This document shows, one piece after another, positions 14,151 to 64,000 of a DNA stretch of 64,000 bases. The stretch lies in NCBI GenBank assembly GCA_964187785.1, contig OZ076418.1:41478001-41542000 (forward strand), written 5' to 3'. The notes below the pieces were generated by a model. That model had not been told where the DNA came from. It did no database searches and saw only the letters and a program-made list of their open reading frames with translations. The DNA comes from Amphiscolops sp. MND2022. Lineage: Eukaryota. Every line of letters begins with the position of its first letter. Position 1 is the stretch's first letter. The translations under genes were made by a program, and so were the position numbers.

Positions 14151-14314
14151 TAATTTAGGGGAATGTATCAAACTTCTTTGAACCTTCCGCGTTAATTTGG
14201 ACCTAAAATGTCTTTTCCTCTATCTAGTCGATCGAAGCTTTTGAAAAATCAAAACTCAAGTTAAGTTTGATAACGTGATTCATTAAGAAATCCTTTAGCT
14301 TCACTTGAAGAATT

Positions 14315-15689: not shown

Positions 15690-17384
15690 AAACTCTCAAA
15701 ATGGCTTACTGTAGTGTACTTCCATTGGGGATAAGTTCTGTTGGTTTGAAAAATTGTTGAATATTTCCAGCATTTTTGCTTTTTAAATCTCTTAAACTCT
15801 CAAAATGGCTTACTTTGGTGTACTTCCATTGGGGATAAGTTCTGTTGGTTTGAAAAATTGTTGAATATTTCCCGCATTTTTGCTTTTTAAATCTCTTAAA
15901 CTCTCAAAATGGCTTACTTTGGTGTACTTCCATTGGGGATAAGTTCTGTCGGTTTGAAAAATTGTTGATTATTTCCAGCATTTTTGCTTTTTAAATGTCT
16001 GAAACTCTAAAAATGGATGACTTTTGTGTACTTCCATTGGGGATAAGTTCTGTCGGTTTGAAAAATTGTTGAATATTTCCAGCATTTTTGCTTTTTAAAT
16101 GTCTTAAACTCTAAAAATGGATGACTTTAGTGTACTTCCATTGGGGATAAGTTCTGTCGGTTTGAAAAATTGTTGAATATTTCCAGCATTTTTGCTTTTT
16201 AAATGTCTGAAACTCTAAAAATGGATGACTTTAGTGTAGTTCCATTGGGGATAAGTTCTGTCGGTTTGAAAAATTGTTGAATATTTCCAGCATTTTTGCT
16301 TTTTAAATGTCTTAAACTCTCAAAATGGCTTACTTTAGTGTACTTCCATTGGGGATAAGTTCTGTTGGTTTGAAAAATTGTTGAATATTTCCAGCATTTT
16401 TGCTTTTTAAATGTCTTAAACTCTCAAAATGGCTTACTTTAGTGTACTTCCATTGGGGATAAGTTCTGTCGGTTTGAAAAATTGTTGATTATTTCCAGCA
16501 TTTTTGCTTTTTAAATGTCTGAAACTCTAAAAATGGCTTACTTTAGTGTACTTCCATTGGGGATAAGTTCTGTCGGTTTGAAAAATTGTTGAATATTTCC
16601 AGCATTTTTGCTTTTTAAATGTCTTAAACTCTAAAAATGGATGACTTTAGTGTACTTCCATTGGGGATAAGTTCTGTCGGTTTGAAAAATTGTTGAATAT
16701 TTCCAGCATTTTTGCTTTTTAAATGTCTGAAACTCTAAAAATGGATGACTTTAGTGTAGTTCCATTGGGGATAAGTTCTGTCGGTTTGAAAAATTGTTGA
16801 ATATTTCCAGCATTTTTGCTTTTTAAATGTCTTAAACTCTCAAAATGGCTTACTTTAGTGTACTTCCATTGGGGATAAGTTCTGTTGGTTTGAAAAATTG
16901 TTGAATATTTCCAGCATTTTTGCTTTTTAAATGTCTTAAACTCTCAAAATGGCTTACTTTGGTGTACTTCCATTGGGGATAAGTTCTGTCGGTTTGAAAA
17001 ATTGTTGAATATTTCCAGCATTTTTGCTTTTTAAATCTCTTAAACTCTCAAAATGGCTTACTTTAGTGTACTTCCATTGGGGATAAGTTCTGTCGGTTTG
17101 AAAAATTGTTGAATATTTCCAGCATTTTTGCTTTTTAAATGTCTTAAACTCTAAAAATGGATGACTTTAGTGTACTTCCATTGGGGATAAGTTCTGTCGG
17201 TTTGAAAAATTGTTGAATATTTCCAGCATTTTTGCTTTTTAAATGTCTCAAACTCTCAAATTGGCTGACTTTAGTGTAGTTCCATAGGGGATAATTTCTG
17301 TCGATTTGCAAAATTGTTGAATATTTCCAGCGTTTTTGCTTTTTAAATGTCTTAAACTCTCAAAATGGCTTACTTTGGTGTACT
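15690..17384. repeat. 104-bp tandem array (~16 units), family A, young
   Basis: Unit GTGTACTTCCATTGGGGATAAGTTCTGTCGGTTTGAAAAATTGTTGAATATTTCCAGC... with period 104 (e.g. 15721, 15825). Two sub-variants (ATGGCTTAC / ATGGATGAC) alternate. Confidence 0.97.
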
Positions 17385-19869: not shown

Positions 19870-20397
19870 CACCTCACCTCCTTAAGTCTCGCAAATGAGT
19901 CTGATGTGCTGTAAAAAGGTTTTGGAATAGATATCACTGTGATTGTTGATGTTTTCAAGTGCTGAGCTGTTTCCATTCCTCGCCTCCTTAAGTCTCGCAA
20001 ATGAGTCTGATGTGCTGTAAAAAAGGTTTTGGAATAGATATCACTGTGATTGTTGATGTTTTCAAGTGCTGAGCTGTTTCCATTCCTCGCTTCCTTAAGT
20101 CTCGCAAATGAGTCTGATGTGCTGTAAAAAGTTTTGGAATAGATATCACTGTGATTGTTGATGTTTTCAAGTGCTGAGCTGTTTCCATTCCTCGCTTCCT
20201 TAAGTCTCGCAAATGAGTCTGATGTGCTGTAAAAAGTTTTGGAATAGATATCACTGTGATTGTTGATGTTTTCAAGTGCTGAGCTGTTTCCATTCCTCGC
20301 CTCCTTAAGTCTCGCAAATGAGTCTGATTTGCTGTAAAAAGGTTTTGGAATAGATTTCACTGTGATTGTTGATGTTTTCAAGTGCTGAGCTGTTTCA
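19870..20397 (-). repeat. 105-107-bp tandem array (~5 units), family C
   Basis: GTCTCGCAAATGAGTCTGAT at 19886, 19992, 20099, 20204, 20309. The 105-bp units are stop-free in two minus-strand frames (35-aa repeats). Confidence 0.95.
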
Positions 20398-28726: not shown

Positions 28727-28981
28727 TCAAAACCGCTTGACAATTGTAAACAAAAACCACTTGAGAATTCAACTCACGCAAAGCAAACATATGGCTCGCA
28801 TAAGCTCTGCTAAAATTAAAGTCAAATATGGAGGTCCTCAAATTTGGACACCACCCAGCTTCCTTTTATGAAGGGTCCTAAAAATTGGACCGCAAGGACC
28901 CCCCCCCCTGTTGAAAGGCCGGCGGGCCTTTTTGGCTCAAAGCGCAAAAAGTGATCTGTCCTTCCTGGTATTTACACTACT
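28727..28981 (-). repeat. Right terminal inverted repeat of Polinton 2
   Basis: Reverse complement of 14315-14566, followed by the TSD AGAATT. Confidence 0.95.
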
Positions 28982-29494
28982 AGAATTGAAACAGTGCCTG
29001 GTAAAGGGTGTGTTTCCCGAAATGATAGAACACAATCCAATTCGCCAGACACCTCTGAATAAACAATCGAAACTAACTTTGTTCCAAATAAAACAATTTA
29101 CAGTCAACATTGAAAAAATTATTCTCTCGAAAAATGGGTGAATATCTACAACTATCGCACCAACATTCTTTATAAAACGCCAAGGAAATAACAGTTAACG
29201 TGATTTTTTTAAGTTCACTCAGCTGTTGCCAAAACAAATTCGATAAAAAAGTTTGTTGCAAGATGAAAAATGGACTAACTTTGCTCAGCCTTCAATAAGT
29301 ACGTTGATAGCCCTAATGAAGAAATTCAAAATAACAATCAGGAAGATATTGTTGAATCTTGTGAGGTAAACTAATTGAACCATGTTTCAAGTTCAGTAAC
29401 GAATCAGGAGAAAACTTAAGACAAGGGATAAAAGTAGGTCAACTTCAAAAATATTTCGTGTTATTTTGTCTTCATACAATTTTTTTTGAGAAAT

Positions 29495-38147: not shown

Positions 38148-41100
38148 CTAACGAAGTTTACGATACAATCTTTCCAGATCTTTGGCCAGACTTCTTTTAA
38201 GGATGCTGGAAGCTGTCATGAGCCCAGAATTCATAGCCGGCGAGTTGCCACAGAACCAGATGTCTTGTCCTGTTGAGTGATGTCCAGTTTAACAAGTGAC
38301 TCAGCCCATCAATAATTTAATGAAAATGAGTTTTATTCGGTACCCACTAAAAGCACAAAAACGCAGTCTTTCAATTTTGTTTGAAACATGTTGAAAAAGT
38401 TTGACCGACTTCAAAAATCGAATACAGAAACCGGGCTTCATAAAAACGTAAAAAAATTAAAGGGGACCATTCGGGTTGTTTTCGCTTCCCATGGTTGCAA
38501 GCCATGGAGCTGCTCAAATAAGAATCCTTTTGAAATTTTAAAGAAGACGCCCGCTGACCACTTTTCGCCCTAAACTGTTCTATAAACACTGTTCTATAAA
38601 TTTGAGGCTCAATAGTAGCCAATGCACTATGAAAATGCAAAAAGTTCGAAGGAAAGAAAGTTTTGATTCAACTTAGCCCATTTTTAAAGGAAAGACCTAA
38701 TTTATAAAGACGCCGAGTACCTTATGGTTTTGTTGTTGAACTATGTTGATACCAATACCTAACACCAAATTTTTAGTCGGCGCTTTTCTAAAGAGCAACT
38801 ATTGTCATGGCTTTTCGTCAGCTTTTTCGATACACCACCTGATCTGTCCAAAATGGTTCTACTTCCCAGGTATCACCACACTACCACTTGCCTAGTGGTT
38901 AACGCGAATTTCTTGGTTAACGCAATTTTTAGTTTTTTGAGGATTTCCGTGAAGGAAACATGTTTCCCGAGAGATTTGAGGTTACTTTTTGATTCTGTGG
39001 AACTGATGAGTTTTCTTATTGATTGTTGAAAATACCTTTTCGCAGCTTTTTTGGCTCTGTGTTTCTATCGGAAACTTTCATTTGGTCGAACTCCCGTTTT
39101 CATAGCTGACTTCGGCTCGAGAAAATTTTAAAATTTTTGCTAGCTGAAATCTTATTCAGCACTAAGGGACTTTCCCGAAATAAAAACAATTTCCGAGTCT
39201 CAGGCGTATTTCTTGGGGTACTTTTGTAAGAAGTAGGTAAGAGTTTGAAAACAATGACCATAGCATATTTGAGAAATTTGAGCTGGTCGCCGACTTTTGC
39301 CGGTCCCGGCATGTTATATTTTTGCCCATAAAGTCACCAAAAATGTTAAACACTAGAAAATTTTGAATTTTTCGACAACTTTGGGGTCATTTTAGGAATT
39401 TTTCAAACAAAAAACAACAGATGTCTCTTCTAAAAAGCCTACTGAGTACCGAGTTCAGTCGCTGTTGAATGTTTATATTCCAACATAACAAAAACTGCAA
39501 AGAAAGCAAGTATTGATTTTTGGGTTATTCTAAGATTTTCTCCCTACGTGGGAAACTGCAAAAACATTTTCTTTTGGAAGACGTACTACATCGCTGGTGT
39601 TTTTCCTTGGAGCTCGTTGAATATCAAATATTTGACAAAAAGTGTCAAAAAGAACTTAACGTTTTCGAAATAATTTTTTCGAAATTCTGCAAAAATGTTT
39701 GTCTCAAATTTTTGGAACCCCACCGGTTGCTTCCCGTTTTAATTATCAGCCTTCGGATTATCTAGTTAATGACCACATTTGGAAAGGGTCCAAAATTGGG
39801 AGTATGTCTACAAAAACATTCACGGATTGAACAAAAAAATCAGGCTTTTGAATTTTGAGGTTTTTGAGATCAACTCTAAGAAATTGCTGTTATTTCTTCA
39901 AAAATTCCTGTTGGACATCCGGCATCAGTCCTTGCTGGGTTTATAAACCACTAAATGCAATGAAAATTCTCGAAAATGAAAAAACTGCAAAAAAAATAGT
40001 CGAAAACTTGAAAGTTCAGAGTTTTCGCTTACGTTGGGTCTATCTTATCTAACTTTCCATCATAAAAAGTACAAAAGCGTGCTACGTGTCTAGTTATTGT
40101 ATGTTCCTTCTCGAAGCTTTTTATCTTGCTTAAAGGTTCTAATCTCAAATTAAAAAATTACAGAAAATGTCAACAATGGCCAAAAACTTTCCTATATTTG
40201 CGACTTTTTGCTGTCCATTTTGAGGCTTTTTGCAACAGAAGTCAGCAAATATGTCTTCAAACACCTATTGAATACCGCGTTCAAACGCTGTTGAACGTTT
40301 TCATTATTCTGACTCTAAACCATTTAAAAGTACACACAAGTTGCATATAAACGTGAAGATGTTGAAATTTTTCCGAAATTCCAGTCGGAGTCATTCTGAA
40401 CTTTTGAACACATAAAATCTCTCGGGAATTGGACAGAATTGCATGAACAACTAATTTGAAAATTTTTGACTTTTCGACATCCTCTCGATCAATTTGAAGC
40501 ATTTTTCGATGATGAGTTGTATTTGTCTTCTGACAAAACCCTACTGGACAACGAACTCTTCCCTTGTTTCGCAGTTTCCACATTCTGGTCCATCGAGTCT
40601 ATCGATAATTCGAAAAAATTGAATAAAATAGTGAATAGGAAACCTCGGAATTTTTATATTTTCGGTGTCAATTTGAGACAATTTTCATTCAAGAAACTGC
40701 ATTTATCTCTCCACCAAGCCTACGGGGCAACAAATTTAACCCTTGTTGATCTTTTCTTGATTTGGCAAAATTTGAAAAAACGCATCACAGATCATGATTT
40801 TCATCCCCCAAATTTATTTGTGGGGTCGTAAAATAATAAAAAACGAGTTCTTGTCTTGTTTACCGTTTTATTCTAACTCAAGAAGTCTTTCGAAAATTTG
40901 ACAAAAATTGCAAGAAATTGTAAAAAACCAATATTTTGATATTTTTGTTCATTTCGGTCTCAATGTGAGGCATTTTTCGTACAATAACCCGCCTTTTTAC
41001 TACGAAGACGCCTCCTGGACAACGAATTCTTTCTTTGTTGAACGTTTTCAACATACTTAGCCATCAAGTCTATCGAAAATTTGATAGAAATTGCTCAAAA

Positions 41101-43809
41101 ACGCTAGAAATTGGAAAATTTTGAAAATTTTAACATTTTTGGTTATTCGGGGGTCCTTGGGGCAATCACAAAGTCCAAAAATCTCTACAAATACACATCA
41201 CACGGAGCCAAATTTATGTGAGTTGAATTCTATGGCTGACATCCTTGAATTTGAATATAAATTCAGTGCTTGGCAAATTTTGTAAAATTTGATTTGAATA
41301 TTTTCCTTTACGATATGGAATATGGGCGGAAAATAAAAATCCCACTATAGTCGCTAAGGAATGTTTATGTGACAGATCATCCCCAAAGACTCCAATAAAA
41401 GAATAGGATAAAACTCCCAAAAAAGACTCCATTCCATCTATCATGTCTTAATGTCAAAAAATACAACAAACTGAAATGTTGGAACGTTTTTAAAACACCT
41501 GGATGTAGCCCGCACGTAGCGTCGTGGATATCAGTTCGCGTTGCAGAAACTCTTTTGCAAAACAGAATCTTTGCAGCAAAAAACCACAGCCTAAAAATTT
41601 TAACGAATCGAGAATTGCACAAAACTGGTGCAAGATCTACAAATCAGCTTTTGACTCTGTTCGAATGAAAAACGATTTTGTCATACCAACCAAAGAATTA
41701 TCACAAAATATTTCTGCAGTTTTTCGACTAAGGTAGCTACAAAATGAAACAAAACTTCGCAAAAAATGAAGCAAGACTTTTTTGGCTGGGATCATTTCCA
41801 AAAAAAAAAGAAAATACTTTCGAAAAACATCAAAAATAGATACCTTTGCCAATTTGGGACTATCATTTGTGAATTTGAGGTGAAATTCGTGTAAAACCAA
41901 CGTGAAACTTTTTAATGGTTATAAGCGTTATTTTTATACGCCCGTAACAAACCAACTAATCATTGTTGTTGGGGATTTTCGGCAGCGCCGAAGGGATTCT
42001 TTCCCACTATTGAAATTATGACTGGTGAAATTAGCCAAAAACAGCACCTAGTTTTTACCTTAAATGGTTTGTCGAAGAAATCTCCGAAATGACTGCAATG
42101 GACATCACTCGCCTGTTAAAAACAAGTTCGAGATCTCTGTTTGAGGTCGACATTTGATGACGAAGTCTAGATCAAACCTGCTCGAGCTGTGATTTATTCC
42201 AGAAATTTGACCCTGATAAGTTTTTAAGTAGAAACTATGTGTAACTGGTGTCCCCACAACAAGTAATTCTCGTTTGTCTTCCAGTTGTGGGAATGTTTCC
42301 ACTATACGATCCCAAATTTTAACAGAAAACTTGTCCTTCAAAGCTTCGTATTTATCATCTTGTTTTCTTTCAGGACAGTCATCCCAAAGTCGAAACCATC
42401 GATAGGGCACAAAAGTTACTGCTATACAAGTGGCAGGAACATCCTGATGAATGAAACTGTAATTCGGGTCCTTTGCACAGGGAAAGGTTACATAAAGAAT
42501 AGGAACTCCAAAGTTTTCAATAGCTGTGAAAGGATCCGGTTCCGAAACCCACTTCGTGAACAACTCGCTGTAATCAAGACCATCGTACAACCAGGTGTTT
42601 CTCGCAGGAAGTTTCAGATTTGCCTTAGTATCTGATAAACCAATGAAAACATTGAAAAAACTTATACCGGGTTCACTTCTGTTCAACAGCCAATTAGCTT
42701 CCGGGCAATATTGGTCTACAATGTGCCTTGGAATCAAGTTTCGGTAAGTGTTAAAAAGGCCAACTCCAGAGATAACAGTATCAGCCAGAAATTGAATAGA
42801 AGCACTTGGACCACATCTGACAAGAACACCATATGCTTGCATTTTGTTATTATTCAGTCTTCGAATCAAAATTTCATTAGCACAGGCTTTGGTGTAGAAA
42901 TTGCCGCCATTCTTCAAGATCGTTTTGTTCAAGTAATACGCTATGGATGATGGTCCGTTAACAGGGTAGTAAGTTCCACTAGAGATCAATCGACCCAAAG
43001 TTGACGCCACTGCAAAAACTGGGCATCTATTGGGCGGTGTTGCTATATAACCCCAAGAAGAAAGAAAACAGGCTCGAAGTTCTTCATTTTCGGTTATTTC
43101 TTCCACCAGATCTACAGCTGGTTTTGTTAAAAAATCAGTCCACCGACGAAAATACTTCAAACGGGACACTTTTTTCAACACAGTAGCTAACCAGCGCGGT
43201 GATAACTTCAACAAGGTAAGAAACACATTCAAACTCAAACACTTCTTGATGATTGTAATGAATTCATCAATTGCCACTTCTTCATCTGGAAAATTTCGCA
43301 GCATCATCGCTTTCCATCCCTCAAAGGTACTTTCCATAATGATTTTCATTTCATTCTTTTTCTTTCCGCCCTTCCTGAGAACGATCTCATCGAACTGATC
43401 GTCTAATTTACGCCAGCACAACTGTCCTTCACATAATTGTTCCAAAAGCTTGAAATTCATACTTTCAGCATCGAGTTCCGAAGCAAAATGGAACCCAGTG
43501 TCGAACTCGAAGTTGCCTTCTTTGAAAGTATGACAACCTCCGCCTAACTTGGCATGTTGCTCCAACACCAACACTTTTTTCCCTATAGAAAGTAGCTTTT
43601 ACGGAAAAGTAGAATTGTCAACGGAAAAGCAAGCAAATTCCGAATGAACCTGATTTTGCCAAAATAGCACTGGCAATGAGTGACGAGACACCACTACCAA
43701 TACAAATGACATCATAGCTGCGACAGAAGTCTGATTCCAACTCTGATGGTTCTAAGTGGTTCCTCAAGACTTTTCTCCGACTTCTCGGGACACGCGAAGG
43801 AGTGGCCAT
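38148..43809 (-). CDS. RETSAT: RETSAT-like oxidoreductase copy B; exons 43809-43650, 43582-42113, 38269-38148; 583 aa
   Basis: Rossmann GSGVSSL and FDTGFH motifs. Exon 2 ends NLFLT-G at a GC donor (G|GCGAGT). The exon at 38269 supplies GQDIWFCGNSPAMNSGLMTASSILKRSL..., the RETSAT-type C-terminus, in the correct phase. Confidence 0.85.
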
Positions 43810-46800
43810 TTCAATGACAGCATTTTCGTTGAAGGGGTTATTGCGAGCATTCCGCCGAAGCCGCCAAAAAATGTACAATGAAATTGTCGTAGCACTCGTT
43901 ACTAGTACAACAGCTCAAACTAAAAATAATGATGTTGGTTATCATTCTGTATACTCAAACTTAACGGACGTCTTTTCTCACGGCAGAAAAAGACCGATTT
44001 CACATCGAAATCACTTTCAACCATTTGTTTTTCCAAAATCAATAAAATTATACTTGTAACGGATTGTTCATTATACCGTGGAAACATTTCATAAACAGAA
44101 TATTTCCTTGTTTAATCTTCTGAGATGATCATTATTCTAGTGCCATTTTGGTCATCATCTTAGGAGATATTGCACCCACACCTGTGGTCTGCAATCGAGG
44201 GGAAACATTTAAAATACAAAACAAAAATTTAATACACACACCATAGCAAATCGCAAAAAGATTCGTAACTACCCCCATTGAAGTTAAGTTATCTACTGAA
44301 TTCGACAAGAGGAAAGTTATGACTAACGCAAGACTGCTAAAAGGATCCAACTTGTTTGTTAAACCCAAACTCCTATGTTGAAATTTTTCCGAAATTCCAG
44401 TCGGAGTCATTCTGAACTTTTGAACACATAAAATCTCTCGGGAATTGGACAGAATTGCATGAACAACTAATTTGAAAATTTTTGACTTTTCGACATCCTC
44501 TCGATCAATTTGAAGCATTTTTCGATGATGAGTTGTATTTGTCTTCTGACAAAACCCTACTGGACAACGAACTCTTCCCTTGTTTCGCAGTTTCCACATT
44601 CTGGTCCATCGAGTCTATCGATAATTCGAAAAAATCGAATAAAATAGTGAATAGGAAACCTCGGAATTTTTATATTTTCGGTGTCAATTTGAGACAATTT
44701 TCATTCAAGAAACTGCATTTATCTCTCCACCAAGCCTACCGGGCAACAAATTTATCCCTTGTTGATCTTTTCTTGATTTGGCAGAATTTGAAAAAACGCA
44801 TCACAGATCATGATTTTCATCCCCCAAATTAATTTGTGGGGTCGTAAAATAATAAAAAACGAGTTCTTGTCTTGTTTACCGTTTTATTCTAACTCAAGAA
44901 GTCTTTCGAAAATTTGACAAAAATTGCAAGAAATTGTAAAAAACCAATATTTTGATATTTTTGTTCATTTCGGTCTCAATGTGAGGCATTTTTCGTACAA
45001 TAACCCGCCTTTTTACTACGAAGACGCCTCCTGGACAACGAATTCTTTCTTTGTTGAACGTTTTCAACATACTTAGCCATCAAGTCTATCGAAAATTTGA
45101 TAGAAATTGCTCAAAAACGCTAGAAATTGGAAAATTTTAACATTTTTGGTTATTCGGGGGTCCTTGGGGCAATCACAAAGTCCAAAAATCTCTACAAATA
45201 CATATCACACGGAGCCAAATTTATGTGAGTTGAATTCTATGGCTGACATCCTTGAATTTGAATATAAATTCAGTGCTTGGCAAATTTTGTAAAATTTGAT
45301 TTGAATATTTTCCTTTACGATATGGAATATGGGCGGAAAATAAAAATCCCACTATAGTCGCTAAGGAATGTTTATGTGACAGATCATCCCCAAAGACTCC
45401 AATAAAAGAATAGGATAAAACTCCCAAAAAAGACTCCATTCCATCTATCATGTCTTAATGTCAAAAAATACAACAAACTGAAATGTTGGAACGTTTTTAA
45501 AACACCTGGATGTAGCCCGCACGTAGCGTCGTGGATATCAGTTCGCGTTGCAGAAACTCTTTTGCAAAACAGAATCTTTGCAGCAAAAAACCACAGCCTA
45601 AAAATTTTAACGAATCGAGAATTGCACAAAACTGGTGCAAGATCTACAAATCAGCTTTTGACTCTGTTCGAATGAAAAACGATTTTGTCATACCAACCAA
45701 AGAATTATCACAAAATATTTCTGCAGTTTTTCGACTAAGGTAACTACAAAATGAAACAAAACTTCGCAAAAAATGAAGCAAGACTTTTTTGGCTGGGATC
45801 ATTTCCAAAAAAAAGAGAAAATACTTTCGAAAAACATCAAAAATAGATACCTTTGCCAATTTGGGACTATCATTTGTGAATTTGAGGTGAAATTCGTGTA
45901 AAACCAACGTGAAACTTTTCAATGGTTATAAACGTTATTTTTATACGCCCGTAACAAACCAACTAATCATTGTTGTTGGGGATTTTCGGCAGCGCCGAAG
46001 GGATTCTTTCCCACTATTGAAATTATGACTGGTGAAATTAGCCAAAAACAGCACCTAGTTTTTACCTTACATGGTTTATCGAAGAAATCTCCGAAATAAC
46101 TGCAATGGACATCACTCGCCTGTTAAAAACAAGTTCGAGATCTCTGTTTGAGGTCGGCATTTGATGACAAAGTCTAGATCAAACCTGCTCGAGCTGTGAT
46201 TTATTCCAGAAATTTGACCCTGATAAGTCTTCAAGTAGAAACTATGTGTAACTGGTGTCCCCACAACAAGTAATTCTCGTTTGTCTTTCAGTTGTGGAAA
46301 TGTTTCCACTATACGATCCCAAATTTTAGCAGCAAACTTGTCCTTCAAAGCTTCGTATTTATCATCTTGTTTTCTTTCAGGACAGTCATCCCAAAGTCGA
46401 AACCATCGATAAGGCACAAAAGTTATTGCTATACAAGTGGCAGGAACATCCTGATGAATGAAACTGTAATTCGGGTCCTTTGCACAGGGAAAGGTTACAT
46501 AAAGAATAGGAACTCCAAAGTTTTCAATAGCTGTGAAAGGATCCGGTTCCGAAACCCACTTCGTGAACAACTCGCTGTAATCAAGACCATCGTACAACCA
46601 GGTGTTTCTCGCAGGAAGTTTCAGATTTGCCTTAGTATCTGATAAACCAATGAAAACATTGAAAAAACTTATACCGGGTTCACTTCTGTTCAACAGCCAA
46701 TTAGCTTCCGGACAATATTGGTCTACAATGTGCCTTGGAATCAAGTTTCGGTAAGTGTTAAAAAGGCCAACTCCAGAGATAACAGTATCAGCCATAAATT

Positions 46801-48211
46801 GAATAGAAGCACTTGGACCACATCTGACAAGAACACCATATGCTTGCATTTTGTTATTATCCAGTCTTCGAATCAAAATTTCATTAGCACAGGCTTTGGT
46901 GTAGAAATTGCCGCCATTCTTCAAGATCGTTTTGTTCAAGTAATAAGCTATGGATGATGGTCCGTTAACAGGGTAGTAAGTTCCACTAGAGATCAATCGA
47001 CCCAAAGTTGACGCCACTGCAAAAACTGGGCATCTATTGGGCGGTGTTGCTATATAGCCCCAAGAAGAAAGAAAACAGGCTCGAAGTTCTTCATTTTCAG
47101 TTATTTCTTCCACCAGATCTACAGCTGGTTTTGTTAAAAAATCAGTCCACCGACGAAAATACTTCAAACGGGATACTTTTTTCAACACAGTAGCTAACCA
47201 GCGCGGTGATAACTTCAACAAGGTAAGAAACACATTCAAACTCAAACACTTCTTGATGATTGTAATGAATTCATCAATTGCCACTTCTTCATCTGGAAAA
47301 GTTCGCAGCATCGTCTCTTTCCATCCCTCAAAGGTACTTTCCATGATGATTTTCATTTCATTCTTTTTCTTTCCGTCCTTCCTGAGAACGATCTCATCGA
47401 ACTGATCGTCTAATTTACGCCAGCACAACTGTCCTTCACATAATTGTTCCAAAAGCTTGAAATTCATACTTCCAGCATCGAGTTCCGAAGCAAAGTGGAA
47501 CCCAGTGTCGAACTCGAAGTTGCCTTCTTTGAATGTATGACAACCTCCGCCTAATTTGGCATGTTGCTCCAACACCAACACTTTTTTCCCTATAGAAAGT
47601 AGCTTTTACGGAAAAGTAGAATTGTCAACGGAAAAGCAAGCAAATTCCGAATGAACCTGATTTTGCCAAAATAGCACTGGCAATGAGTGACGAGACACCA
47701 CTACCAATACAAATGACATCATAGCTGCGACAGAAGTCTGATTCCAACTCTGATGGTTCTAAGTGGTTCCTCAAGACTTTTCTCCGACTTCTCGGGACAC
47801 GCGAAGGAGTGGCCATTTCAATAACAGCATTTTCGTTGAAGGGGTTATTGCGAGCATTCCGCCGAAGCCGCCAAAAGATGTACAATGAAACTGTCGTAGC
47901 ACTCGTTACTAGTACAACAGCCCAAACTAAAAATAATGATGATGGTTATCATTCCGTATACTCAAACTTAACGGACGTCTTTTCTCACGGTAGAAAAAGA
48001 CCTATTTCACATCGAAATCACTTTCAACCATTTGTTTTTCCAATATCAATATCAATAAAAATACACTTGTAACGGATTGTTCTTTATACCGTGGAAACAT
48101 TTCATAAACAGAATATCTCCTTGTTTAATCTTCTGAGATGATCATTATTCTAGTGCCATTTTGGTCATTATCTTAGGAGATATTGCATTTGTGGTCTGCA
48201 ATCGAGGGGAA
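40359..48211. repeat. Recent ~4.0-kb tandem segmental duplication (40359-44204 vs 44375-48211)
   Basis: Offset 4016, then 4007 after a 9-bp indel. Near-identical sequence including introns. Confidence 0.95.
46120..47816 (-). CDS. RETSAT: RETSAT-like copy C, exons 1-2 (47816-47657, 47589-46120); no terminal exon of its own
   Basis: Intact duplicate of copy B exons 1-2 with a few amino-acid changes and the same GC donor at 46119. Confidence 0.8.
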
Positions 48212-48599
48212 GAAGAAGAAATCAATTAACCTTCGGGATGTGGCAGTACAAATGACTTTCTATCATCGATTCCAGAACAAAGTAAATAGTATAAATAGAA
48301 TTGACACAGAAGGAAGGCAAGTGAGGATTGCAGGATTACAAGAATTAATCGATGCTTGCAATAAAGCCAGCCAACGCATTTATAACATGCTTGTTTTCGC
48401 AATTTAGCAAACCAACTAGCGTTTCGTCAATGTTTTGATTTTGAAGCTCCTTAATGAAACTCCTTCGGTGTTCTTGGTATATGACACAGGAAAATAAGAA
48501 GTGTGCAGTATCATCGACAACTCTACAATAGGGACAAATATCGGTTTTGCTCTTTTTACTTCTGAATAATACTTCGCGTACTTCAAAATCATTCATTAG
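48212..48599 (-). mobile_element. 5'-truncated 3' end of another LINE inserted after the duplication
   Basis: CPYC...DTAHFLFSC C-terminal CCHC motif and a TTC-repeat tail. Absent at the equivalent site (44204) of the other duplicate. Confidence 0.7.
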
Positions 48600-49099
48600 A
48601 ACATTTAAAATGCAAACACAAAAGATTTAATACACATACCATAGCAAATCACAAGAAGATTCGTAACTACCTTATCACAACAGCCACATATGCAATACAA
48701 AGAAGTTAATTTTCTTTGGTGTAGTATATACATATATAATACAATAAAGTATAATATATAAAGATAGTTAACAATTTTTTTCCATTGGTATTTATCTACA
48801 CCAAAGGGGACCCTCCAAAAATGAAAAATACTAAGACGGGGGAGGACCCTCCTTACACAGAACATCACACAAAAACTATATCAGCCAGACATTCACTCTT
48901 CATTCGGTTTTTGATGTTACGGAGACTTTTGCTAAGCTCTCGACTTTCGCATATCTCGTATTCAGGAGGCAAAAGTTTTTTCCTCAGAAGGTGATTCAGT
49001 AGTAACGTTCCACGATACTTCAGAGACTGTCGTTGAACTTCCAAACCTAGCCGCGGTACATTAAACATATTCGTGCTAACGCTTCGTGAGGAAATCGAT

Positions 49100-52918: not shown

Positions 52919-53113
52919 GATTGTAATGAATGCATCATTTGCCACTTCTTCATCTGGAAAATTTTGCAGTATCGTCTCTTTCCATCCCTTAAAGGTACTT
53001 TCCATAATGATTTTCGTTTCATTCTTTTTATTTCCGTCTTTCCTGAGATTGATCTCATCGAACTGATCGTCTAGTTTACGCCATCACAACTGTACTTCAC
53101 ATAGTTGTTCCAA
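52919..53113 (-). pseudogene. RETSAT fragment (copy D)
   Basis: Clearly homologous to 47249-47450 (WRKLDDQFDEI...MESTFKGWKE...FPDEEVA), with an in-frame stop. Confidence 0.85.
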
Positions 53114-53127
53114 TCGTTACTAAGTGG

Positions 53128-53475
53128 AAAAAGCCTGATAGAGGACTTCGTCCTATCGCTGAAGGCAATACGTTCCACCGGTTATCCGCAAAATACGCCA
53201 GATACCATGTCTTCGAATCACGTCAGGCAAACTACGGAAGCTGACAAGTAGGTGTAGGCACCAAAAGGGGCGGTGAATTTGCCTCACATGTTTTCTGTTG
53301 TTTGATAGAAAGCCCCCAGCCCAAAGAGAACGTAATTTCGAAAACCAACTTTAAAACACTTTCAATTCGTTCAATCAACAAATCATGCTAGAGAAAACTT
53401 TTGAAATACACCCTAAAGTCATAAGTACTCACACTCGGCGTACAGTCGAACTTACCATTCTTGATAGCCTAATTG
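53128..53475 (+). mobile_element. Internal RT fragment of the CRE-like element
   Basis: Paralog of 54640-54960 (KKPDRGLRPIA...GVGTKRG). Confidence 0.8.
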
Positions 53476-53689: not shown

Positions 53690-56600
53690 GGAGATTGGCA
53701 CACACCCAAATGAGTTGTGATGAAAAACAACGGAACCTGCAACGCTCTGAAGTGTCTGAAGCCCTCAGGGTTAATGAACTGGGTAAAGTGGAGGCTTTGC
53801 AACGAACGGGTTCATATAAAATGCGCCAATTAATCAAGAACGGAGGCTCGAAGCCTTGTCGAATTCAAATGTTGTAGATGCTCTTTAGTGAACACAATCC
53901 CTCAGTGTCACGATGATAACTTTAGACCAGACACTTTTTTCAATTCAGACGTTGTTCACTTGAAAAGAGTTCCCAAAAATTCACGGATCCCTCTAGCTGA
54001 AAACTTGATACCTAAAATTAATGATATTTGTGAAACCCCGACAAAAATTTCCTTGTGGTGCATATTGTTCTCCTCTCTAAGCTGCTGTTTGAGAAAAACT
54101 ACCTCGAGGAGGTAACTTCAGAGGTCATCACTCAGTGCAATATTCAACAAGCGTATTCGGGACTGTGTAATTGAAAAAAGACCGAAACGCGACAAAAAAC
54201 AGCAGCTGAAAAGCGAGTTAGATCGACGACTGCGTTCCATTTGCACTAAATTAGACATAGGTAAAGTTAAGGCCGGAATCAGAATGGCGGTAGGCGACGA
54301 CAAGTTTGCAGGCTTCACGGTCGACAACTACGCGGCCCTCAAGCTGAAACATCCGCAAAGGGAAACTTGCTTTGTTCCGGACCCCACAGATATCGATGGT
54401 TTTTCAACTTCGGAGTTTTTTGTCCACAAGGCTCTCATGTCCTTCCCCAATGGTTCTAGTGCAGGGTTGGATGGCATGGCAGTTCGCCCAAAGTTTTGAA
54501 AGATTGACTGCCAAGTCGAACAGGCAAACTTGACTGAATTCTCTCAGAGCCTTAACAAATCTTGTGAATGTGATTCACGACGGAAAAGTACCTTTCGCAC
54601 CTCGGCCGTACTTCTTTGGTGCGAAACTAATTGCTCTGAAAAAGCCTGATGGAGGACTTCGTCCCATCGCTGTAGGTATTACTTTCCACCGGTTATCCGC
54701 AAAATGCGCCGTATACCATGTCTTCGAATCACGTCAGGCAAGACACGGAAGTCGAGAAGAAGGTGTAGGCACCAAAAGGGGCGCTGAATTGGCCTCACAT
54801 ATTTTCTGTTGTTTGATAGAAAACCCCCAGCCGAAAGAAATCGTAATTTTGAAATTTGATTTCAAAAACGTTTTCAATTCTATTAACCGACAATTCATGC
54901 AAGAGAAAACTTTCGAAATACACTCTGAAAGTTATCAGTCCTCACACTCTGCGCACAGTCAACCATGTTTTCTTTTTTGTGATTCAGTAATCAAATTTTG
55001 TGAAGCGACCCAGCAAGCAGATCCTGAGTCTCCAGCTTTGTTTTCGGATTCCATTCAGGATCTAATTGACAAATTGGAGTCGAAAACAAACTTATGGCAC
55101 CTTTACAATGGAAACTTAAGTAATGATTACAGAACCGTTTTGGAAGATCTCAAAAAATTGTTGGTGCGGAAAAAACGGTGGGTCTCAAAATTAAACCCAT
55201 TATATGTGAAATTTTGTTCCTTGGGGACATCACTGGAAAACGCCGATCGACAATTTTAGCATCTTGCAAAAAATTTTGTCCCGGAATTAAAACACCAAAG
55301 AAAGACGAAGGTATCCTTCTTGGTTCACTGCTCGGTCCGAATTCACAGGCAGACTTATTGGAAAAGAAAATCAATGACCTGGAAAAAGTTGATGAAATTG
55401 TTGAAAAACTAGATGCGCACAATGGTTTTTTCATGTTGAAAAATTAGCTTCAGTCTTCCAAAATTGTTGTATTTCCTGAGAACCAGTACATGTTTTAATA
55501 ACCCAGCTATCTTGGAAAAGTATGACAAAATCGTACGCGACGTGCGTTCCATAGTGTAACGGCGACTTCGACAACATTTCGAGTACTCAGCTGGCCCGCT
55601 GAAATGTGTGGTCTAGGGTGTCATCCCCATCAATATTAGCACTTGCTGCCTTTTTGGCCTCAACTTTTGGTGCGAGTGACTTTCTCACGACGATTTTCTT
55701 GGAAATATTCGAAGATGTTTCATTAACAAAAGCGCTTCAGAAATGGTCGAGTTTGACGAATGAACATGAAAGTCCTCTCGATGGAACCCATAAAAATTGG
55801 ACACACCTGTCTTCGTCAAAAGCGCCCAACAATTGATTTTTAGAATCGATGACAAACGTTCGAAAGTTTTCAACGCTCACCAAGACAAATTCGGGTCTCA
55901 ATGGCTGAACGTCGTTCCTTGTAAAAACCTAGGCCTGAAACTTGATGATCAACAACTTCGGATTACAGTTGGTTCACGTCTCGGAGCCAACAGTTGCGTT
56001 GCGCATACGTGCCACTGTGGTAAAAGAGTTGTACCGGACGGTTTACACGGTCTTTTTTGCACCAAGAGTGCTGGTCGCTTCTCACGTCATGCTACTCTCA
56101 ATGCTCTCATAAAGCAGACGTTGGGATCTCTCGACTTGCCTTCAATGCTCGAACCGCGTGGACTGTACCGAACCGATGGCAAACGCCAGACGGTGTTACC
56201 ATGATTCCTTGAGAACTGGGTAAACAGCTGGTGTGGGATTTCACGGATGTGGATGCTGTTGCACCCAGTCGCCTGAAGCAAGGCTCTTTATGCAACCCCG
56301 GAACCACCGCCACCGAGGCTGAAGTGCGTAAAATTGAGAAGTGTCGCGAATTAAGAGACAATGGATACATTTTTCAACCGGTGGCCTTGGAAGTACAGGG
56401 TTCCTTAGGCGAGAGCAGTGAAATTTTCATCACGCGTCTCTGAAAAATGCTCTGTCGTTCTCACGACGATTAACGAGCTGGCAGCTTTTGAAGCAACGAA
56501 GTTCAATGGCTCTTCAGATCAGCAATGGGGCTTGTCTTCTAGAAACTGTGAGTGACAGAGATGCGTTCGAAGAAATTTAATACATCTAGTTTATTTTTTA

Positions 56601-59255: not shown

Positions 59256-60071
59256 AAAGAGGTTGGAGACTATAAGTTTGAATTGAAGTGTGTTAGGTTT
59301 AAGTAAGAATTGGTGATTTCAAGATACGGTAGTAAGCAACTTGTCTCGTCAGAAGTTACAATTCGTGTGTTTTCGGTATTGCCCGATTGAGTAATTATAA
59401 AAGTGTGTTAGCACCTTCCCTTTTAGCCAATGACGTTCAATCTACTAATTGTTGTTTAATTGCACTTGACGACTGCAACTACCAGTCGTCGCGGGTGATA
59501 ATAGGTGTTTAATTACTCTTGCTTGATGTAGTATGACCGCAAGCACCAGTCATTTCCGTGTTCGATTAACTCAATTACCTCTTAAACTGAGGCTTTACTA
59601 CCGTGTATCCTTATCATCATAGTGACTGCTTTAAATATCGTTTTGAAGTAATTTACTAATGGATACTGCACTAATTACTGATATAAATAGACGAAATGTT
59701 GTGAAATGATTGAGTATTCTAGTAATACTTTACATGTAATATAAAAAGTGTAAAAAACAATGGTTAAATGATGCACTATCACGATAGCTGATGACTGATT
59801 GTTTCAGTCGTACATGTATAAATCATCTGCAATGACTGGATATTCCAGTCCTGGTTTTTAAACAATGCACAATAACATGGATGGATGTTTAAACGATGCA
59901 CAATAACATGAATGGATGATTGTTGGTTTCAGTCGTTATGTGTTCAACTGTATTGTTCGGCAATTAAATTACTGTAATGTATTTACATGATGATTTGTAT
60001 TTTAGGGAGTTTGATGTATGAATTGGTATTTTAGGGTTCATTTATTTCCTTCATGCTTGGCAGGCATGACA
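59255..60071 (-). mobile_element. Probable LTR (~817 bp)
   Basis: Minus strand: polypurine tract AAAAAGGGGGGAA (60084-60072), then TGTCATG...; ends ...TA immediately before TGGTAACTACC (PBS-like). Confidence 0.55.
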
Positions 60072-60879
60072 TTCCCCCCTTTTTGAGAGAGAGCGAGCTG
60101 TAGGGGTAATGGGAAAGGTGAACGACTGAGTTGAGTGGTAGTAGGTGGTTGAGTTTAGAATTGAACAGCGGCTGAAGTGGCGTGCGAGGTATGGAAGAAC
60201 GTGTGGGTGGCAATGTAGTGGCTGAGACTTTCGGAAGCATGAATGGACAAGGTGAGGTAGGCAAACAGTGGGTAGTCGGAAGTTGAAGTTTATTTATAGT
60301 AACAGTTTGACAGCCACGTCATCCGTTTAGTGCGCATAGAGTGTAATGTTTGTTTAAGCAACTTTTCATCGATCATCGGCAGTTGATTGATTTGTTGCGT
60401 TGTTGTAGAGTGAGTCAGTTGCTTGCTTTATTGCTTTTAAAATTGAATTTGGTCCTGTTTATACTTGTCCTTATCCATCTTCGTTTTGTCAACCGTTGGT
60501 GTTGCTCATTCTTCCACAATAATAAAGGTAGTGCGATTTTTGTTTTTCCCAGTTAGTCCTGTATTTTCCGGGTATCGATTAGGCGGTTAACTCGGGAGGG
60601 AATATATGTACTGTTATGGCTAGGGAAAACTTGACTGCGTTCTCTCTGCTGATTAGCATTTGATATCCTGTGGGTGGAGTCGTGAATATGATTCCGCGAA
60701 TGTCCGGTAATTACTTGGGTAGACCGTTTGATAGGGTGGGTTAGGTGTCCATTATATATTGATATAGGTGATCAGTCTATAACAATAAGAAATGGAAGAA
60801 TGAGCTGTTGCAGTCGAGTCGCCGTCGCCATTTTATTGTTATCCCCGATCGTGTCGTGTGTTACCTTATCGCTCCGACA

Positions 60880-63800
60880 ATGTCCGATGAAGAAGGAGTT
60901 TTATCCTTTAGTGGTGAGCTCTCTGCATTAGTTGCTGAAGTCGAGCACCAAATGGCTGCAGGTAATCCCCCGTTAGATGAGAGTGGGAGTGGACTGGATT
61001 TATCTGCAGTGCTGATGGAGAACAATCAGTGTTGCCAGTTCGCTGCGCGGGTTTCTGCGTCAAACGTTGGGGATCTGGGTTGCTTGTTGGATGTCGTGCT
61101 TTCCCAGGAATTTGGTAAGTACTGGTTTTACATTTACTTTCTCCATAAGAGCTAGGCCTGAGTTATTCTGTCGTGGGGTTGCGTTCCGTGGATGCTGATC
61201 CCAGAACAACTGGAGCGTCTATGTCATCTCTGTTGTTGAGACTGTTCAATATTTTTGTAGCTGATGTCAACATGACCGAGTTAGTCTCCTACTTGCGTCA
61301 GTTTCGATCTTCCGTGGCTACTGGGTCCTCCGGGAGTGCTGATTTGGATTCTGCTCCCATCTTGCGTCGTTTGGATGCTTTCCTCTCTTCGCATCTCGGT
61401 GGGTGCATTTGCGTTTACTGTTAAGCTAAGTTATATGTTGGGGGGGTCTTCTTCCATACCAGCGCCTGCAGTTTACGGTTGCTGTTCTCTACTCAGTTGA
61501 TGATAGGCGTCTTCGTTCGTTCGGTTCTAAGTAGGTGCTGAAAATTGTTGGTTGCTTTGTAGATGCCAACGTTCGGGCTGACGTCATTGTGGGCCAGTTC
61601 ACGGAGTTGTTCCAACGTGTGGAACGAGAAATTCAACAGTGGGTCAAGGCAGCTGTTGAATCAAGCCTTGGCAAGCTAGGAACGGTGGGTGCTCTCGCCG
61701 TTGAGGAGTTCCTTGGAAAACTGAAGGGGGCACTGCAGGAACTCGGTCAATCGTCATTCTCTTCTTGTGTGGGTGATGTTCTTCCGCGCTCGTCATCTGT
61801 CGCTGGCAGTGTAGCTGGATTTGAGAGTCGCCGGACATGTGTGGACTCGGACGTGCCGCCATCAGACTTCGGTGAACGGAGTGTGGCTCCATCTGGTGCT
61901 CCATCTTCCTCTGGCGTTGCGACGACTTCAAAACCTGGTAATGAATCTCACAAGATCATGCGAGGGGGTTTTAGTAGTAATTTGGGGGGGGGGGTTGGTA
62001 GTTAACTAAGGACTAAGTACAAACACAGTTTTTTTTGTTTTTTTTTTGGAGTTTTTGTAAGTTTCTAACGGGTGTTATTGATGTTATTTCAATTGGTATT
62101 TCTTGTATGTACAGGGCGAAAACGTGCGATCAAGACGCTAAAGCCGTCCTTTTTTGTCTCCGGCGTCGTGGGGACCTTTGTTGGTTTCCCAAGACACAAG
62201 CGCGTCATCGATGGCTATGCTAGATGTCGTTTGTGCCGGGTAGACCTCAGCATTGCGGGACGTGGGCTCCACAACTTGTGGGACCACTGGAAGGGGCGAG
62301 AGCACACTCGCCTCGAGCAGCGCTTTCGTATCATGTCCAATAGGCCCCTGTTGGACAAGTCGTGCAGGCCTGTTTCAGTAGAGGAGGACCGGAGGATCCG
62401 GGCAGAAAGAATGTCGGAGCCCCCTGTCATTCTGGAGTCCGAGTTTAGATTGACCGTTGAGGAGCGCGTGGCCATCGAGATCGAGGAGGAGGCTGCTGGC
62501 GCAAAACCGAAATTGGCTGAGACGAGTGCAGCATACCTTTGGCTATGCTGCTTCATTAATGGTTTTGTGGAGTTGCGTGACTTTGCCAGTGTGACCCGCT
62601 TCGTCGAGTCATGGTCAGGCAGTATGCGGGGTGAAGTCGAGTTTGCTGAGCGTGCACTGTCATACCCTAAGTGTCAGGTAATACCTTTTCTTTGTTGTTG
62701 TCTTGCGTTTCTTCTACAGCTAGGTGTTGTGTTGTATTTTGCTTGTTTGTGTGTTGTTGTTGGATGGTTGCGTGATTGATAGGGTGTATCATTGTTGTTT
62801 TTTGTTTTAGAGTCTTGTCTTGTACGGATTATATCCGTTTGTGGTTGAGAAGCTTGGTGACCTGCTGTCCTCAGGGGTGCGCTTTGGGCTACATGTCCAC
62901 GTCGATGGGGCTATGCGGAGGCTGGATTGCCATATTTTTGATGGACTGTCAGTGAAAGTTGTTGTGCTGGCCGTGATCCCGGGCGGGAGCGAGTGGGAAC
63001 GATCCCTTCTCAAGGTCGTGATGTCTCTGCTGTCTTGTGTGGAGTCATACCGAGGTCTAGCTGCAGTGAGTGTGGGCGGGAATCTACGTTTGGGACGTGC
63101 CCTTGCCAGTGTTGCGCATCCAGCTATGCCTCTTGTCACCCGTCGTTTCGATGCTGAGTGGCTCACAGATCTGTTGCGTCGAAAATTCATTGAGGAATCG
63201 AGTGGGCTGGAACCATTCAGCATTCTAGAATACTTTCGTTTTCGATTGGCAGCGGTGATTGAAGACTCGGCCTTCGATAATATGCCTGGACTACGCGAGG
63301 TTGGTTCATTTTGCTTTATGTTATGTTGGTTGGTCTGCTTCTTTCTTGTAGGAGGGGGGGGGTCGAAGGTGGAGGTCTACTTTGCTTTTTCATGGCTTGA
63401 GTAATTAGTGGTGTGTTGTTTCTTGCTGTGTGGTTTATTGGTTTAATTTTCCTGATATCACTGTTTTAGTTCGTGCGTGGTGGCGTCAATCAGTTTCGGG
63501 AGTTGTCTACACTGAGTGCGGAGTTGGTCGAGCGGTGGGATGACCTGGGGGCGTACTTTGGGGTCCATCGGGCGAACACTAGTGCTGAGACGTCGAACAT
63601 TGCGAGCATGGAAACCCAGGTTTTCAATGACGCTATGACGCGACCCCGCTTTGCTGTCCTGAAGTTTCTAGCGGAGACTGGCTAGTATTGATGTTTATTC
63701 GTTCTTGTTTTTGGTTGTTTCTGTGAGGGTTCTTGTGTGTCCTTTGTTCATTTCGGTCTTGGCATCCTGGTTCTTACGTGGGTGTGTGTGAGTTGTCGGC

Positions 63801-64000
63801 ACGTTGGTTGATAATCGATTTTGTGTTTTAGTTGTAGCGAAGTGCCCTCGGCTGTGCAGCAGTGGCAGGGACCGTAATCTCTGGTTCGAGAGAGAGCTGG
63901 CAGCCTTTTTGCGTGTTTTGTTGTCAATGGTGGTCAATCCCGAGACGATCCCGCCAGAGTTCGAGGTCTTGGCTGTCCTGAAGCTGAAGATCAGTGAGAG
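60880..64000 (+). CDS. Multi-exon hAT-transposase-like gene, 3'-partial (exons 60880-61114, 61261-61398, 61563-61937, 62115-62677, 62811-63299, 63470-63680, 63832->64000)
   Basis: Six consecutive phase-compatible introns (five GT-AG, one GC-AG). C-x2-C-x17-H-x5-H finger (CRLC...HWKGREH), FGLHVHVD, ERWDDLGAYF and LAAFLRVLL patterns resemble hAT-family proteins. Confidence 0.6.

What the first reader, a model, noticed from the sequence alone, without database searches (positions are those of the whole stretch)
38148..47816. Two RETSAT 5' cassettes share one terminal exon (UGT1A/protocadherin-like layout)
The duplication covers promoter, exon 1, exon 2 and part of intron 2, but not the terminal exon at 38269-38148. 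Copy C is intact and slightly diverged, yet can only be completed by splicing ~7.8 kb across copy B to the shared exon. This may be a nascent variable-cassette/constant-exon locus diversifying a retinoid/carotenoid-type oxidoreductase.
Basis: partly seen in the sequence, partly recalled or inferred. Interest (0 to 1): 0.7.

Follow-up and report, generated by a model that had tools for sequence, protein, structure and literature searches.

The report
Partial tandem duplication of RETSAT-like gene
A 3.9-kb stretch holding the first two exons of a retinol-saturase-like enzyme gene is really present twice in tandem upstream of a single last exon, but this is best read as an ordinary young partial gene duplication in a duplication-prone worm genome. 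No RNA data exist to show that the upstream copy reaches the shared exon.

Summary
On the minus strand, exon 1, a 67-nt intron, the 1,470-nt exon 2 and 1.75 kb of the next intron occur twice head to tail. These are copy B (40359-44273) and copy C (44375-48211 plus 48600-48673), 98% identical. Only one terminal exon (38269-38148) exists in the window and the genome.

The duplication is very likely real. Its junction carries a 101-nt piece copied from inside a dispersed repeat, with 2- and 3-nt microhomologies. A high-copy repeat fragment sits upstream of C only. A second assembly shows the same layout.

The UGT1A/protocadherin reading is only partly supported:
- Each cassette has two exons, so B's exon-2 acceptor lies in the path of any C transcript, and that join is also in frame.
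- Neither copy has an in-frame ATG ahead of the conserved N-terminal segment.
- The 12 non-synonymous and 17 synonymous differences reject neutrality of both copies, but not "B constrained, C neutral".
- No RNA run was found.

The shared intron looks transposon-born, with a 12-nt terminal inverted repeat, a target-site duplication and a GC donor. kb-scale tandem duplications recur here: the neighbouring paralog has one. An unchecked first-stage note describes the same layout at FARSA on another piece of this genome.

The parts
38148..38269 (-). Single terminal coding exon. It encodes the last 40 residues (QDIWFCG...RKLR, then stop) with the conserved C-terminal FAD-fold motif. AATAAA lies at 38108.
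38270..42112 (-). Intron 2 of copy B (3,843 nt, GC-AG). It has 12-nt terminal inverted repeats at 42110-42099 and 38286-38275, flanked by the direct repeat AACAGG(A)C. Removing it restores TTT TTA ACA GGA CAA GAC = FLTGQD. The interior holds high-copy repeats.
42113..43582 (-). Copy B exon 2 (1,470 nt, phase 1 to phase 1)
43583..43649 (-). Copy B intron 1 (67 nt, GT-AG). The neighbouring paralog has an intron at the same position.
43650..43914 (-). Copy B exon 1 open frame: hydrophobic segment, NPF motif and GSG dinucleotide-binding motif. The first in-frame ATG is at 43809. An upstream ATG (MITNIIIFSL...) is one base out of frame.
43915..44273 (-). Upstream sequence of B that is duplicated (about 360 bp). 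It is the most diverged part of the repeat unit.
44274..44374 (.). Junction filler. This 101-nt piece is copied from the interior of a dispersed repeat of at least 2.1 kb (at least 25 genomic copies, 90-99% identical). It is joined through 2-nt (CC) and 3-nt (ATG) microhomologies.
44375..46119 (-). Copy C remnant of intron 2 (first 1,745 nt, with the 5' inverted repeat and GC donor). It is only 0.74% diverged from B.
46120..47589 (-). Copy C exon 2. If left unspliced, the frame ends two codons past the donor (...LFLTGE*).
47590..47656 (-). Copy C intron 1 (67 nt, identical to B)
47657..47921 (-). Copy C exon 1 open frame. The first in-frame ATG is at 47816.
47922..48211 (-). Upstream sequence of C shared with B
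48212..48599 (-). Very high-copy repeat fragment inserted about 290 bp upstream of C exon 1. It is absent from B, and other copies run on differently at both of its ends.
48600..48673 (-). Last stretch of ancestral upstream sequence shared with B (44204-44273). The homology ends at the breakpoint.
52919..53113 (-). Older decayed 195-nt fragment of exon 2 (about 91% identical, one in-frame stop). It was used as an outgroup.

Best explanation
This is a real partial tandem duplication of the 5' 94% of a RETSAT/carotenoid-isomerase-like FAD oxidoreductase gene.

One breakpoint lies 1.75 kb into the gene's long, transposon-born last intron. The other lies about 390 bp upstream of exon 1. The two ends were joined by microhomology-mediated repair that copied 101 nt from a dispersed repeat.

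The product is, in transcription order:
1. the ancestral upstream region, now carrying a repeat insertion;
2. C exon 1, C exon 2 and a truncated intron;
3. 360 bp of upstream sequence;
4. B exon 1, B exon 2, the full intron and the only terminal exon.

The two-cassettes-one-exon layout is a by-product of where the breakpoints fell, not an evolved diversifying system. B is the complete gene. C can make a full-length enzyme only if its GC donor at 46119 pairs with the acceptor at 38270.

Inferred, not shown: read-through C transcripts do this part of the time, giving an isoform with 12 residue differences. Otherwise they give the truncated ...LFLTGE* product or an in-frame double-length product through B's exon-2 acceptor.
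For: Duplication and exon map.

Single terminal exon.

Family: the nearest named relative is 'all-trans-retinol 13,14-reductase-like', 42% identical. NCBIfam gives weak carotenoid isomerase / CrtI-family hits. Atlas gives amine oxidase and RETSAT-like clusters. The terminal exon aligns with the conserved C terminus of relatives.

A real event rather than an artefact:
- The junction filler comes from the interior of a repeat, with CC and ATG microhomologies.
- A repeat insert is present upstream of C only.
- An ENA contig from another assembler is 99.98% identical over 21.5 kb and carries both copies.
- That contig differs from the window at only 2 substitutions, against about 2% between B and C.
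- There are no Ns in the window.

By-product rather than system:
- The neighbouring paralog carries its own 2.9-kb tandem duplication of one exon, 99.5% identical.
- A decayed older exon-2 fragment lies upstream.
- First-stage notes list further kb-scale tandem duplications in this genome (untested).

Long introns are handled here: the neighbouring paralog's exon matches lie up to about 15 kb apart.
Against: No transcript evidence of any kind: no RNA run holds the stretch.

Logan contigs from the four DNA-type runs, all from one sample, leave holes over the junction and most of C. They neither confirm nor deny the join.

The substitution pattern (12 non-synonymous, 17 synonymous; dN/dS 0.19-0.29) rejects neutrality of both copies (P about 0.002). 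With a realistic transition bias it rejects 'B constrained, C neutral' only marginally (P 0.05-0.17). It therefore leaves room both for a functional C and for a dead C.

Divergence is uneven: intron part 0.74%, synonymous sites 3.4-4.7%, upstream 4.6%. This means gene conversion or a mosaic origin that I cannot resolve.

The start codon of both copies is unclear.
Confidence: 0.55

Rival explanations
1. Working alternative-cassette locus. Both cassettes have active promoters, each is spliced to the shared terminal exon, and selection maintains two slightly different enzymes.
For: - Both 578-codon frames are open, with no indel in 1,735 exonic nt against 5 indel events in about 2,180 non-coding nt.
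- dN/dS is 0.19-0.29.
- In the 195 nt that can be polarised, C carries no more derived replacements than B: B has 3 non-synonymous, C has 1 non-synonymous and 1 synonymous.
- The C-to-terminal-exon join is in frame.
Against: - B's exon-2 acceptor competes and also gives an in-frame product.
- The cassettes differ at only 12 mostly non-conserved residues.
- C's one change at a conserved site is E to K in the PQLEDK motif.
- The selection test cannot isolate C.
- A repeat fragment sits 290 bp upstream of C.
- There is no RNA.
- The same kind of duplication occurs in the neighbouring paralog.
Confidence: 0.2
2. Copy C is a truncated duplicate that never yields a functional protein. It looks intact because it is young and is partly homogenised with B by gene conversion.
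For: - C has no terminal exon of its own, and its unspliced frame stops two codons after the donor.
- The intron part is only 0.74% diverged against 3.4-4.7% at synonymous sites, as expected if conversion tracts erase differences.
- 'B constrained, C neutral' is not rejected.
- An older upstream exon-2 fragment has decayed, with an in-frame stop.
Against: The observed excess of synonymous changes is at the edge of what this model allows (P 0.05-0.17). There is no stop or frameshift in C.
Confidence: 0.2
3. Assembly artefact: two haplotypes of a single-copy locus laid in tandem.
For: All read sets found come from one sample, and no listed contig bridges the join. The allele-like dN/dS would fit two alleles.
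Against: - The join holds a 101-nt repeat-derived filler with microhomologies.
- C alone has a 388-nt repeat insert.
- Two assemblers agree.
- The two assemblies differ at 2 substitutions in 21.5 kb, while B and C differ by about 2%.
- There is no gap or contig end nearby.
Confidence: 0.04

Closest known systems
Variable-first-exon / constant-exon clusters (UGT1A, clustered protocadherins; PMC3325998, PMC1885805)
   Same: Tandem 5' units, each with some upstream sequence of its own, lie ahead of downstream coding sequence present only once. The upstream unit would have to splice over the downstream unit.
   Different: There are only two units, 98% identical. Each unit is two exons with an internal intron, so the downstream unit offers an acceptor. 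No promoter or transcript evidence exists. The constant part is one 40-codon exon rather than a functional domain block.
Partial tandem gene duplications made by microhomology-mediated repair with templated insertions (the common kb-scale structural-variant class; my own knowledge)
   Same: Head-to-tail copies, breakpoints that ignore gene structure, 2-3-nt microhomologies, and a short insertion templated from elsewhere in the genome.
   Different: Nothing essential. The special point is only that the breakpoints left both copies with open frames and one shared last exon.
Transposon-born introns / introners (PMC9860276, PMC12130899)
   Same: The shared intron has terminal inverted repeats and a flanking direct repeat. 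Excising it together with one repeat copy restores the reading frame exactly, and an intronless paralog is continuous at this point.
   Different: The donor is GC, not GT. The termini are not a recognisable multi-copy family in this genome. The element is now 3.8 kb and stuffed with other repeats.
RETSAT (all-trans-retinol 13,14-reductase) / CRTISO / CrtI family of FAD oxidoreductases
   Same: It has the N-terminal GxGxxG motif, family-wide similarity and the conserved C-terminal TGQD...CG motif.
   Different: It is 42% identical to the nearest named animal protein. The substrate is unknown, and the start codon is unclear.

Membership tests
Variable-first-exon / constant-exon locus (UGT1A, Pcdh type) | Downstream exon(s) present once and shared by all upstream units | tested here: met
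   There is one terminal exon in the window. No other was found beside these cassettes in the genome.
Variable-first-exon / constant-exon locus (UGT1A, Pcdh type) | Each variable unit is a single first exon with a donor but no acceptor, so downstream units cannot be spliced in | tested here: not met
   Each unit has exon 1, a 67-nt intron and exon 2. The join from the C donor to the B exon-2 acceptor is in frame: 1,109 codons, no stop.
Variable-first-exon / constant-exon locus (UGT1A, Pcdh type) | Each unit has its own active promoter | not testable with these tools
   Only about 360 bp of upstream sequence is duplicated for B. C has a repeat insert at about -290. No CAGE or RNA data were available.
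Variable-first-exon / constant-exon locus (UGT1A, Pcdh type) | Transcripts join each unit to the constant exon | not testable with these tools
Variable-first-exon / constant-exon locus (UGT1A, Pcdh type) | Units diversified in sequence | tested here: inconclusive
   12 of 578 residues differ, 10 of them at positions that vary among relatives.
RETSAT / CRTISO / CrtI FAD oxidoreductases | N-terminal dinucleotide-binding GxGxxG followed by the LEQH..GG..HTF segment | tested here: met
   The spliced translation reads ...VICIGSGVSS...KKVLVLEQHAKLGGGCHTF. Pfam NAD_binding_8 gives a weak hit on exon 2 alone, 18.9 bits, below the cut-off.
RETSAT / CRTISO / CrtI FAD oxidoreductases | Full-length similarity to family profiles or members | tested here: met
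   E 8e-135 to a protein named all-trans-retinol 13,14-reductase-like, carrying PF01593 and PF13450. TIGR02730 and TIGR02734 hit at E 1e-12 and 4e-10, far below the equivalog cut-offs, so this shows the superfamily only. Atlas clusters agree.
RETSAT / CRTISO / CrtI FAD oxidoreductases | Conserved C-terminal motif closing the FAD-binding fold | tested here: met
   It is encoded by the shared exon. Q, D, C, G and A are invariant in the alignment with three relatives.
RETSAT / CRTISO / CrtI FAD oxidoreductases | Retinol 13,14-saturase activity | not testable with these tools
   Needs an enzyme assay.
Transposon-born intron (introner-like) | Terminal inverted repeats at the intron ends | tested here: met
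   The 12-nt motif GAGTGATGTCCA sits at 42110-42099 (minus strand) and 38275-38286 (plus strand), and again in C. That makes 3 matches in the window against 0.32 expected.
Transposon-born intron (introner-like) | Target-site duplication, with excision of element plus one copy restoring the frame | tested here: met
   AACAGG(A)C flanks both ends. After removal the joined sequence encodes FLTGQD, as in the intronless paralog and other relatives.
Transposon-born intron (introner-like) | Element belongs to a multi-copy family | tested here: not met
   The terminal 300 nt at each end are unique in the genome apart from a 54-nt internal repeat. The 17-mer at the 5' end occurs no more often than chance.

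The most novel reading that the evidence does not exclude
A microhomology-mediated partial duplication, with a breakpoint inside a transposon-born GC-AG intron, has created in one step a two-promoter, two-cassette locus. Both cassettes would be kept under purifying selection because each is completed by the same terminal exon. That would be the birth of a variable-5'/constant-3' gene architecture caught at the two-unit stage in an acoel-like worm.
Probability: 0.2. Interest if true: 0.55.

Novelty: new member of a known kind. Interest (0 to 1): 0.3.

Why it matters
If C is spliced to the shared exon, the locus would show how variable-first-exon architectures can start: a single partial duplication whose breakpoint falls in the last intron.

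As it stands, it is a well-resolved example of an ordinary structural variant. Its junction anatomy is clean, with microhomology plus a templated repeat-derived filler. It lies in a genome that seems prone both to kb-scale tandem duplication and to transposon-made introns.

The practical value is a sharply defined test. Two SNPs lie 37 and 49 nt from the donor, so ordinary short RNA reads can tell B from C at the shared junction.

Tried and rejected

Laying their Logan contigs on 43000-48999 at 99% likeness gave short pieces with holes over the join and most of C. One 1,252-nt contig from B's left flank was laid on C. The tool warns that depths of such contigs are not copy numbers, so I draw nothing from them.

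Repeat family of the intron termini: none was found.

Pfam naming of the filler's source repeat (268-aa ORF) and of the 83-aa ORF in the insert upstream of C: no hits. Their class is therefore left open, and a LINE-like 3' end is only my impression.

A second terminal exon for C between 44204 and 46119: none at E < 1.

A short intron linking the out-of-frame ATG to the main frame: none of plausible size by eye.

Unequal crossing-over between two repeat copies as the origin: rejected, because the filler repeat is absent beyond 48673 and at 40358.
Full report
**What is there**

The window has no Ns. Self-BLAST shows one long direct repeat, 40359-44204 = 44375-48211: 3,852 nt, 98.05% identical, 21 gap positions.

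Both copies carry, on the minus strand, an 86-codon open frame and a 489-codon open frame. Reading the boundaries gives the same structure for each copy:
- exon 1, whose open frame starts at 43914 in B and 47921 in C;
- a 67-nt GT-AG intron;
- a 1,470-nt exon 2 (43582-42113 in B, 47589-46120 in C);
- a donor that reads CAG|GCGAGT, that is GC rather than GT.

The frame is completed by one exon, 38269-38148, preceded by AG. Splicing gives ...LFLTGQDIWFCG... and a stop, with AATAAA 40 nt further on. tblastn of the spliced protein finds this exon only once in the window. A six-frame search of the whole 1.07-Gb genome finds no further copy near the cassettes.

**What the gene is**

Exon 2 is 42% identical (E 8e-135) to a protein that NCBI names all-trans-retinol 13,14-reductase-like, from the acoel Symsagittifera roscoffensis.

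Bacterial NCBIfam models for carotenoid isomerase and the CrtI family match at E 1e-12 and 4e-10, far below their equivalog cut-offs. The ESM Atlas places it among amine-oxidase / phytoene-dehydrogenase / RETSAT-like clusters.

Exon 1 supplies the GxGxxG motif. The shared exon supplies the conserved C-terminal TGQD..CG...A motif, which aligns with three relatives.

The genome holds two paralogs:
- An intronless one on another chromosome (L004, a 656-codon open frame, continuous through YVTGQD).
- A multi-exon one just downstream, starting at window 10760. It shares the position of intron 1.

**Is the duplication real?**

The homology between the copies continues past 44204: 44204-44273 matches 48600-48671. 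C therefore has a 388-nt insert (48212-48599) that B lacks. That insert is an extremely abundant repeat, and other copies run on differently at both of its ends.

Between the copies lie 101 nt (44274-44374) found nowhere else in the window. They are present at 25 or more places in the genome at 90-99% identity. At those places they lie in the middle of a repeat of at least 2.1 kb, whose flanks do not match this locus.

The two joins share CC and ATG with the ancestral sequences. A repeat-templated filler with microhomology is the scar of a repair event, not of an assembler.

An ENA contig with a different assembler's naming style is 99.98% identical over 21.5 kb and has both copies. It differs from the window at two substitutions and three homopolymer lengths, against about 2% between B and C. 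That argues against two alleles laid side by side.

The weak point is that all read sets found come from one sample. Their Logan contigs leave holes over the join. I put an artefact at about 4%.

**How the layout arose**

The left breakpoint (40359) lies 1,745 nt into the last intron. The right one lies about 390 bp upstream of exon 1.

In transcription order, C inherits the whole ancestral upstream region but no terminal exon. B keeps about 360 bp of upstream sequence and the complete 3' end. The two-cassette, one-exon layout follows directly from the breakpoints.

The neighbouring paralog has its own 2.9-kb tandem duplication containing one exon, 99.5% identical. A decayed 195-nt piece of exon 2 with a stop lies at 52919-53113. 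First-stage notes on this genome list several more kb-scale tandem duplications, including the same layout at FARSA. Those notes are unchecked, and I use them only as a lead. Such duplications seem to be a routine process here.

**The shared intron**

Its first bases after GC and its last bases before AACAG are a perfect 12-nt inverted repeat: 3 matches in the window including C, against 0.32 expected.

The flanks repeat AACAGG(A)C. Removing the intron leaves TTT TTA ACA GGA CAA GAC, which encodes FLTGQD. This is what relatives and the intronless paralog have there.

This is the signature of a cut-and-paste transposon insertion that became an intron, a known route of intron gain (PMC9860276, PMC12130899). 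The termini are not a multi-copy family today. The insertion predates the duplication, because C keeps the 5' end of the intron.

**Can C work?**

If unspliced, C stops two codons after its donor. It then lacks the conserved C-terminal motif.

Three joins are all in frame:
- C exon 2 to the terminal exon.
- C exon 2 to B exon 2, giving 1,109 codons.
- C exon 2 to a possible acceptor in front of B exon 1, giving 1,197 codons.

The second join uses a genuine acceptor that lies nearer. This is the main anatomical difference from UGT1A and the protocadherin clusters, whose variable units are first exons without acceptors (PMC3325998, PMC1885805). An intron of 7.85 kb is not a problem in itself: the neighbouring paralog's exon matches lie up to about 15 kb apart.

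**Selection**

The exons differ at 29 sites: 17 synonymous and 12 replacements. dN is about 0.009, dS is 0.034-0.047 and dN/dS is 0.19-0.29.

Simulation with the observed transition bias gave:
- Neutrality of both copies is rejected (P about 0.002).
- 'B constrained, C neutral' gives P 0.05-0.17.
- Constraint on both copies fits well.

The old fragment polarises five differences. B has three derived replacements. C has one replacement and one silent change.

Ten of the twelve replacements lie at positions that vary in the family. B has V for a conserved I, and C has K for the conserved E of PQLEDK.

Divergence is uneven: 0.74% in the intron part, 1.7% in the exons and 4.6% upstream. This points to gene conversion or a mosaic origin and weakens any dating. 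The data therefore show constraint on at least one copy and are compatible with, but do not prove, a functional C.

**A caveat on 'intact'**

It encodes a hydrophobic segment and an N-P-F motif that aligns with relatives. There is no in-frame ATG there.

An ATG followed by MITNIIIFSL lies one base out of frame, and another out-of-frame ATG precedes the in-frame one. The neighbouring paralog has its ATG in the same exon as the GxGxxG motif.

Three explanations remain open: the N terminus was frameshifted before the duplication and translation starts at the internal ATG; an unseen upstream exon exists; or initiation is unusual. If there is an upstream exon beyond 48673, the event is an internal exon-pair duplication rather than a promoter duplication.

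**Verdict**

It is a new member of a known kind: a partial tandem gene duplication, here across a transposon-born intron.

Noticed in passing
window 38270-42112 (and 44375-46119): The last intron of the gene looks transposon-born. It has 12-nt terminal inverted repeats and a flanking AACAGG(A)C direct repeat, and its excision restores FLTGQD exactly. The donor is GC. The one-base difference between the two repeat copies is what makes the GC donor consensus.
   Followed up: partly
window 43915-43950 and 47922-47957: In both copies the only ATG ahead of the conserved hydrophobic N-terminal segment is one base out of frame. B also has TGA where C has TGG in the main frame. This could be an old frameshift, an unseen 5' exon or internal initiation.
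   Followed up: partly
L008:1-1938 and L009:2-1938 (genome C10:41465049-41471229, just outside the window): The neighbouring multi-exon RETSAT-like paralog carries a 2.9-kb tandem duplication, 99.5% identical. It contains one 84-codon exon, and the two exon copies differ by one residue.
   Followed up: partly
L004:1135-3102 (genome C2:97518942-97520909): An intronless, apparently complete paralog (656-codon open frame, 39% identical). It is continuous across the point where the window gene has its long intron.
   Followed up: partly
window 52919-53113: An isolated 195-nt fragment of exon 2, about 91% identical, with an in-frame stop. It lies next to other local repeats (53127-53451 = 54638-54963, 85% identical). 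It may be the remnant of an older duplication or a captured fragment.
   Followed up: partly
window 46795: The second assembly (L001) has G where the window has T. This turns C's Met354 into the Leu that B has. It is either a heterozygous site in C or consensus bleed-through from B.
   Followed up: no
window 14314-14566 and 28727-28982: A 256-nt inverted repeat pair, 98% identical and 14.4 kb apart. It brackets the 104-nt satellite arrays at 15684-17384 and 19872-20396.
   Followed up: no
window 60001-64000: G+C rises to 0.47-0.50 with strong strand asymmetry (GC skew +0.23, AT skew -0.23 to -0.31), unlike the rest of the window.
   Followed up: no
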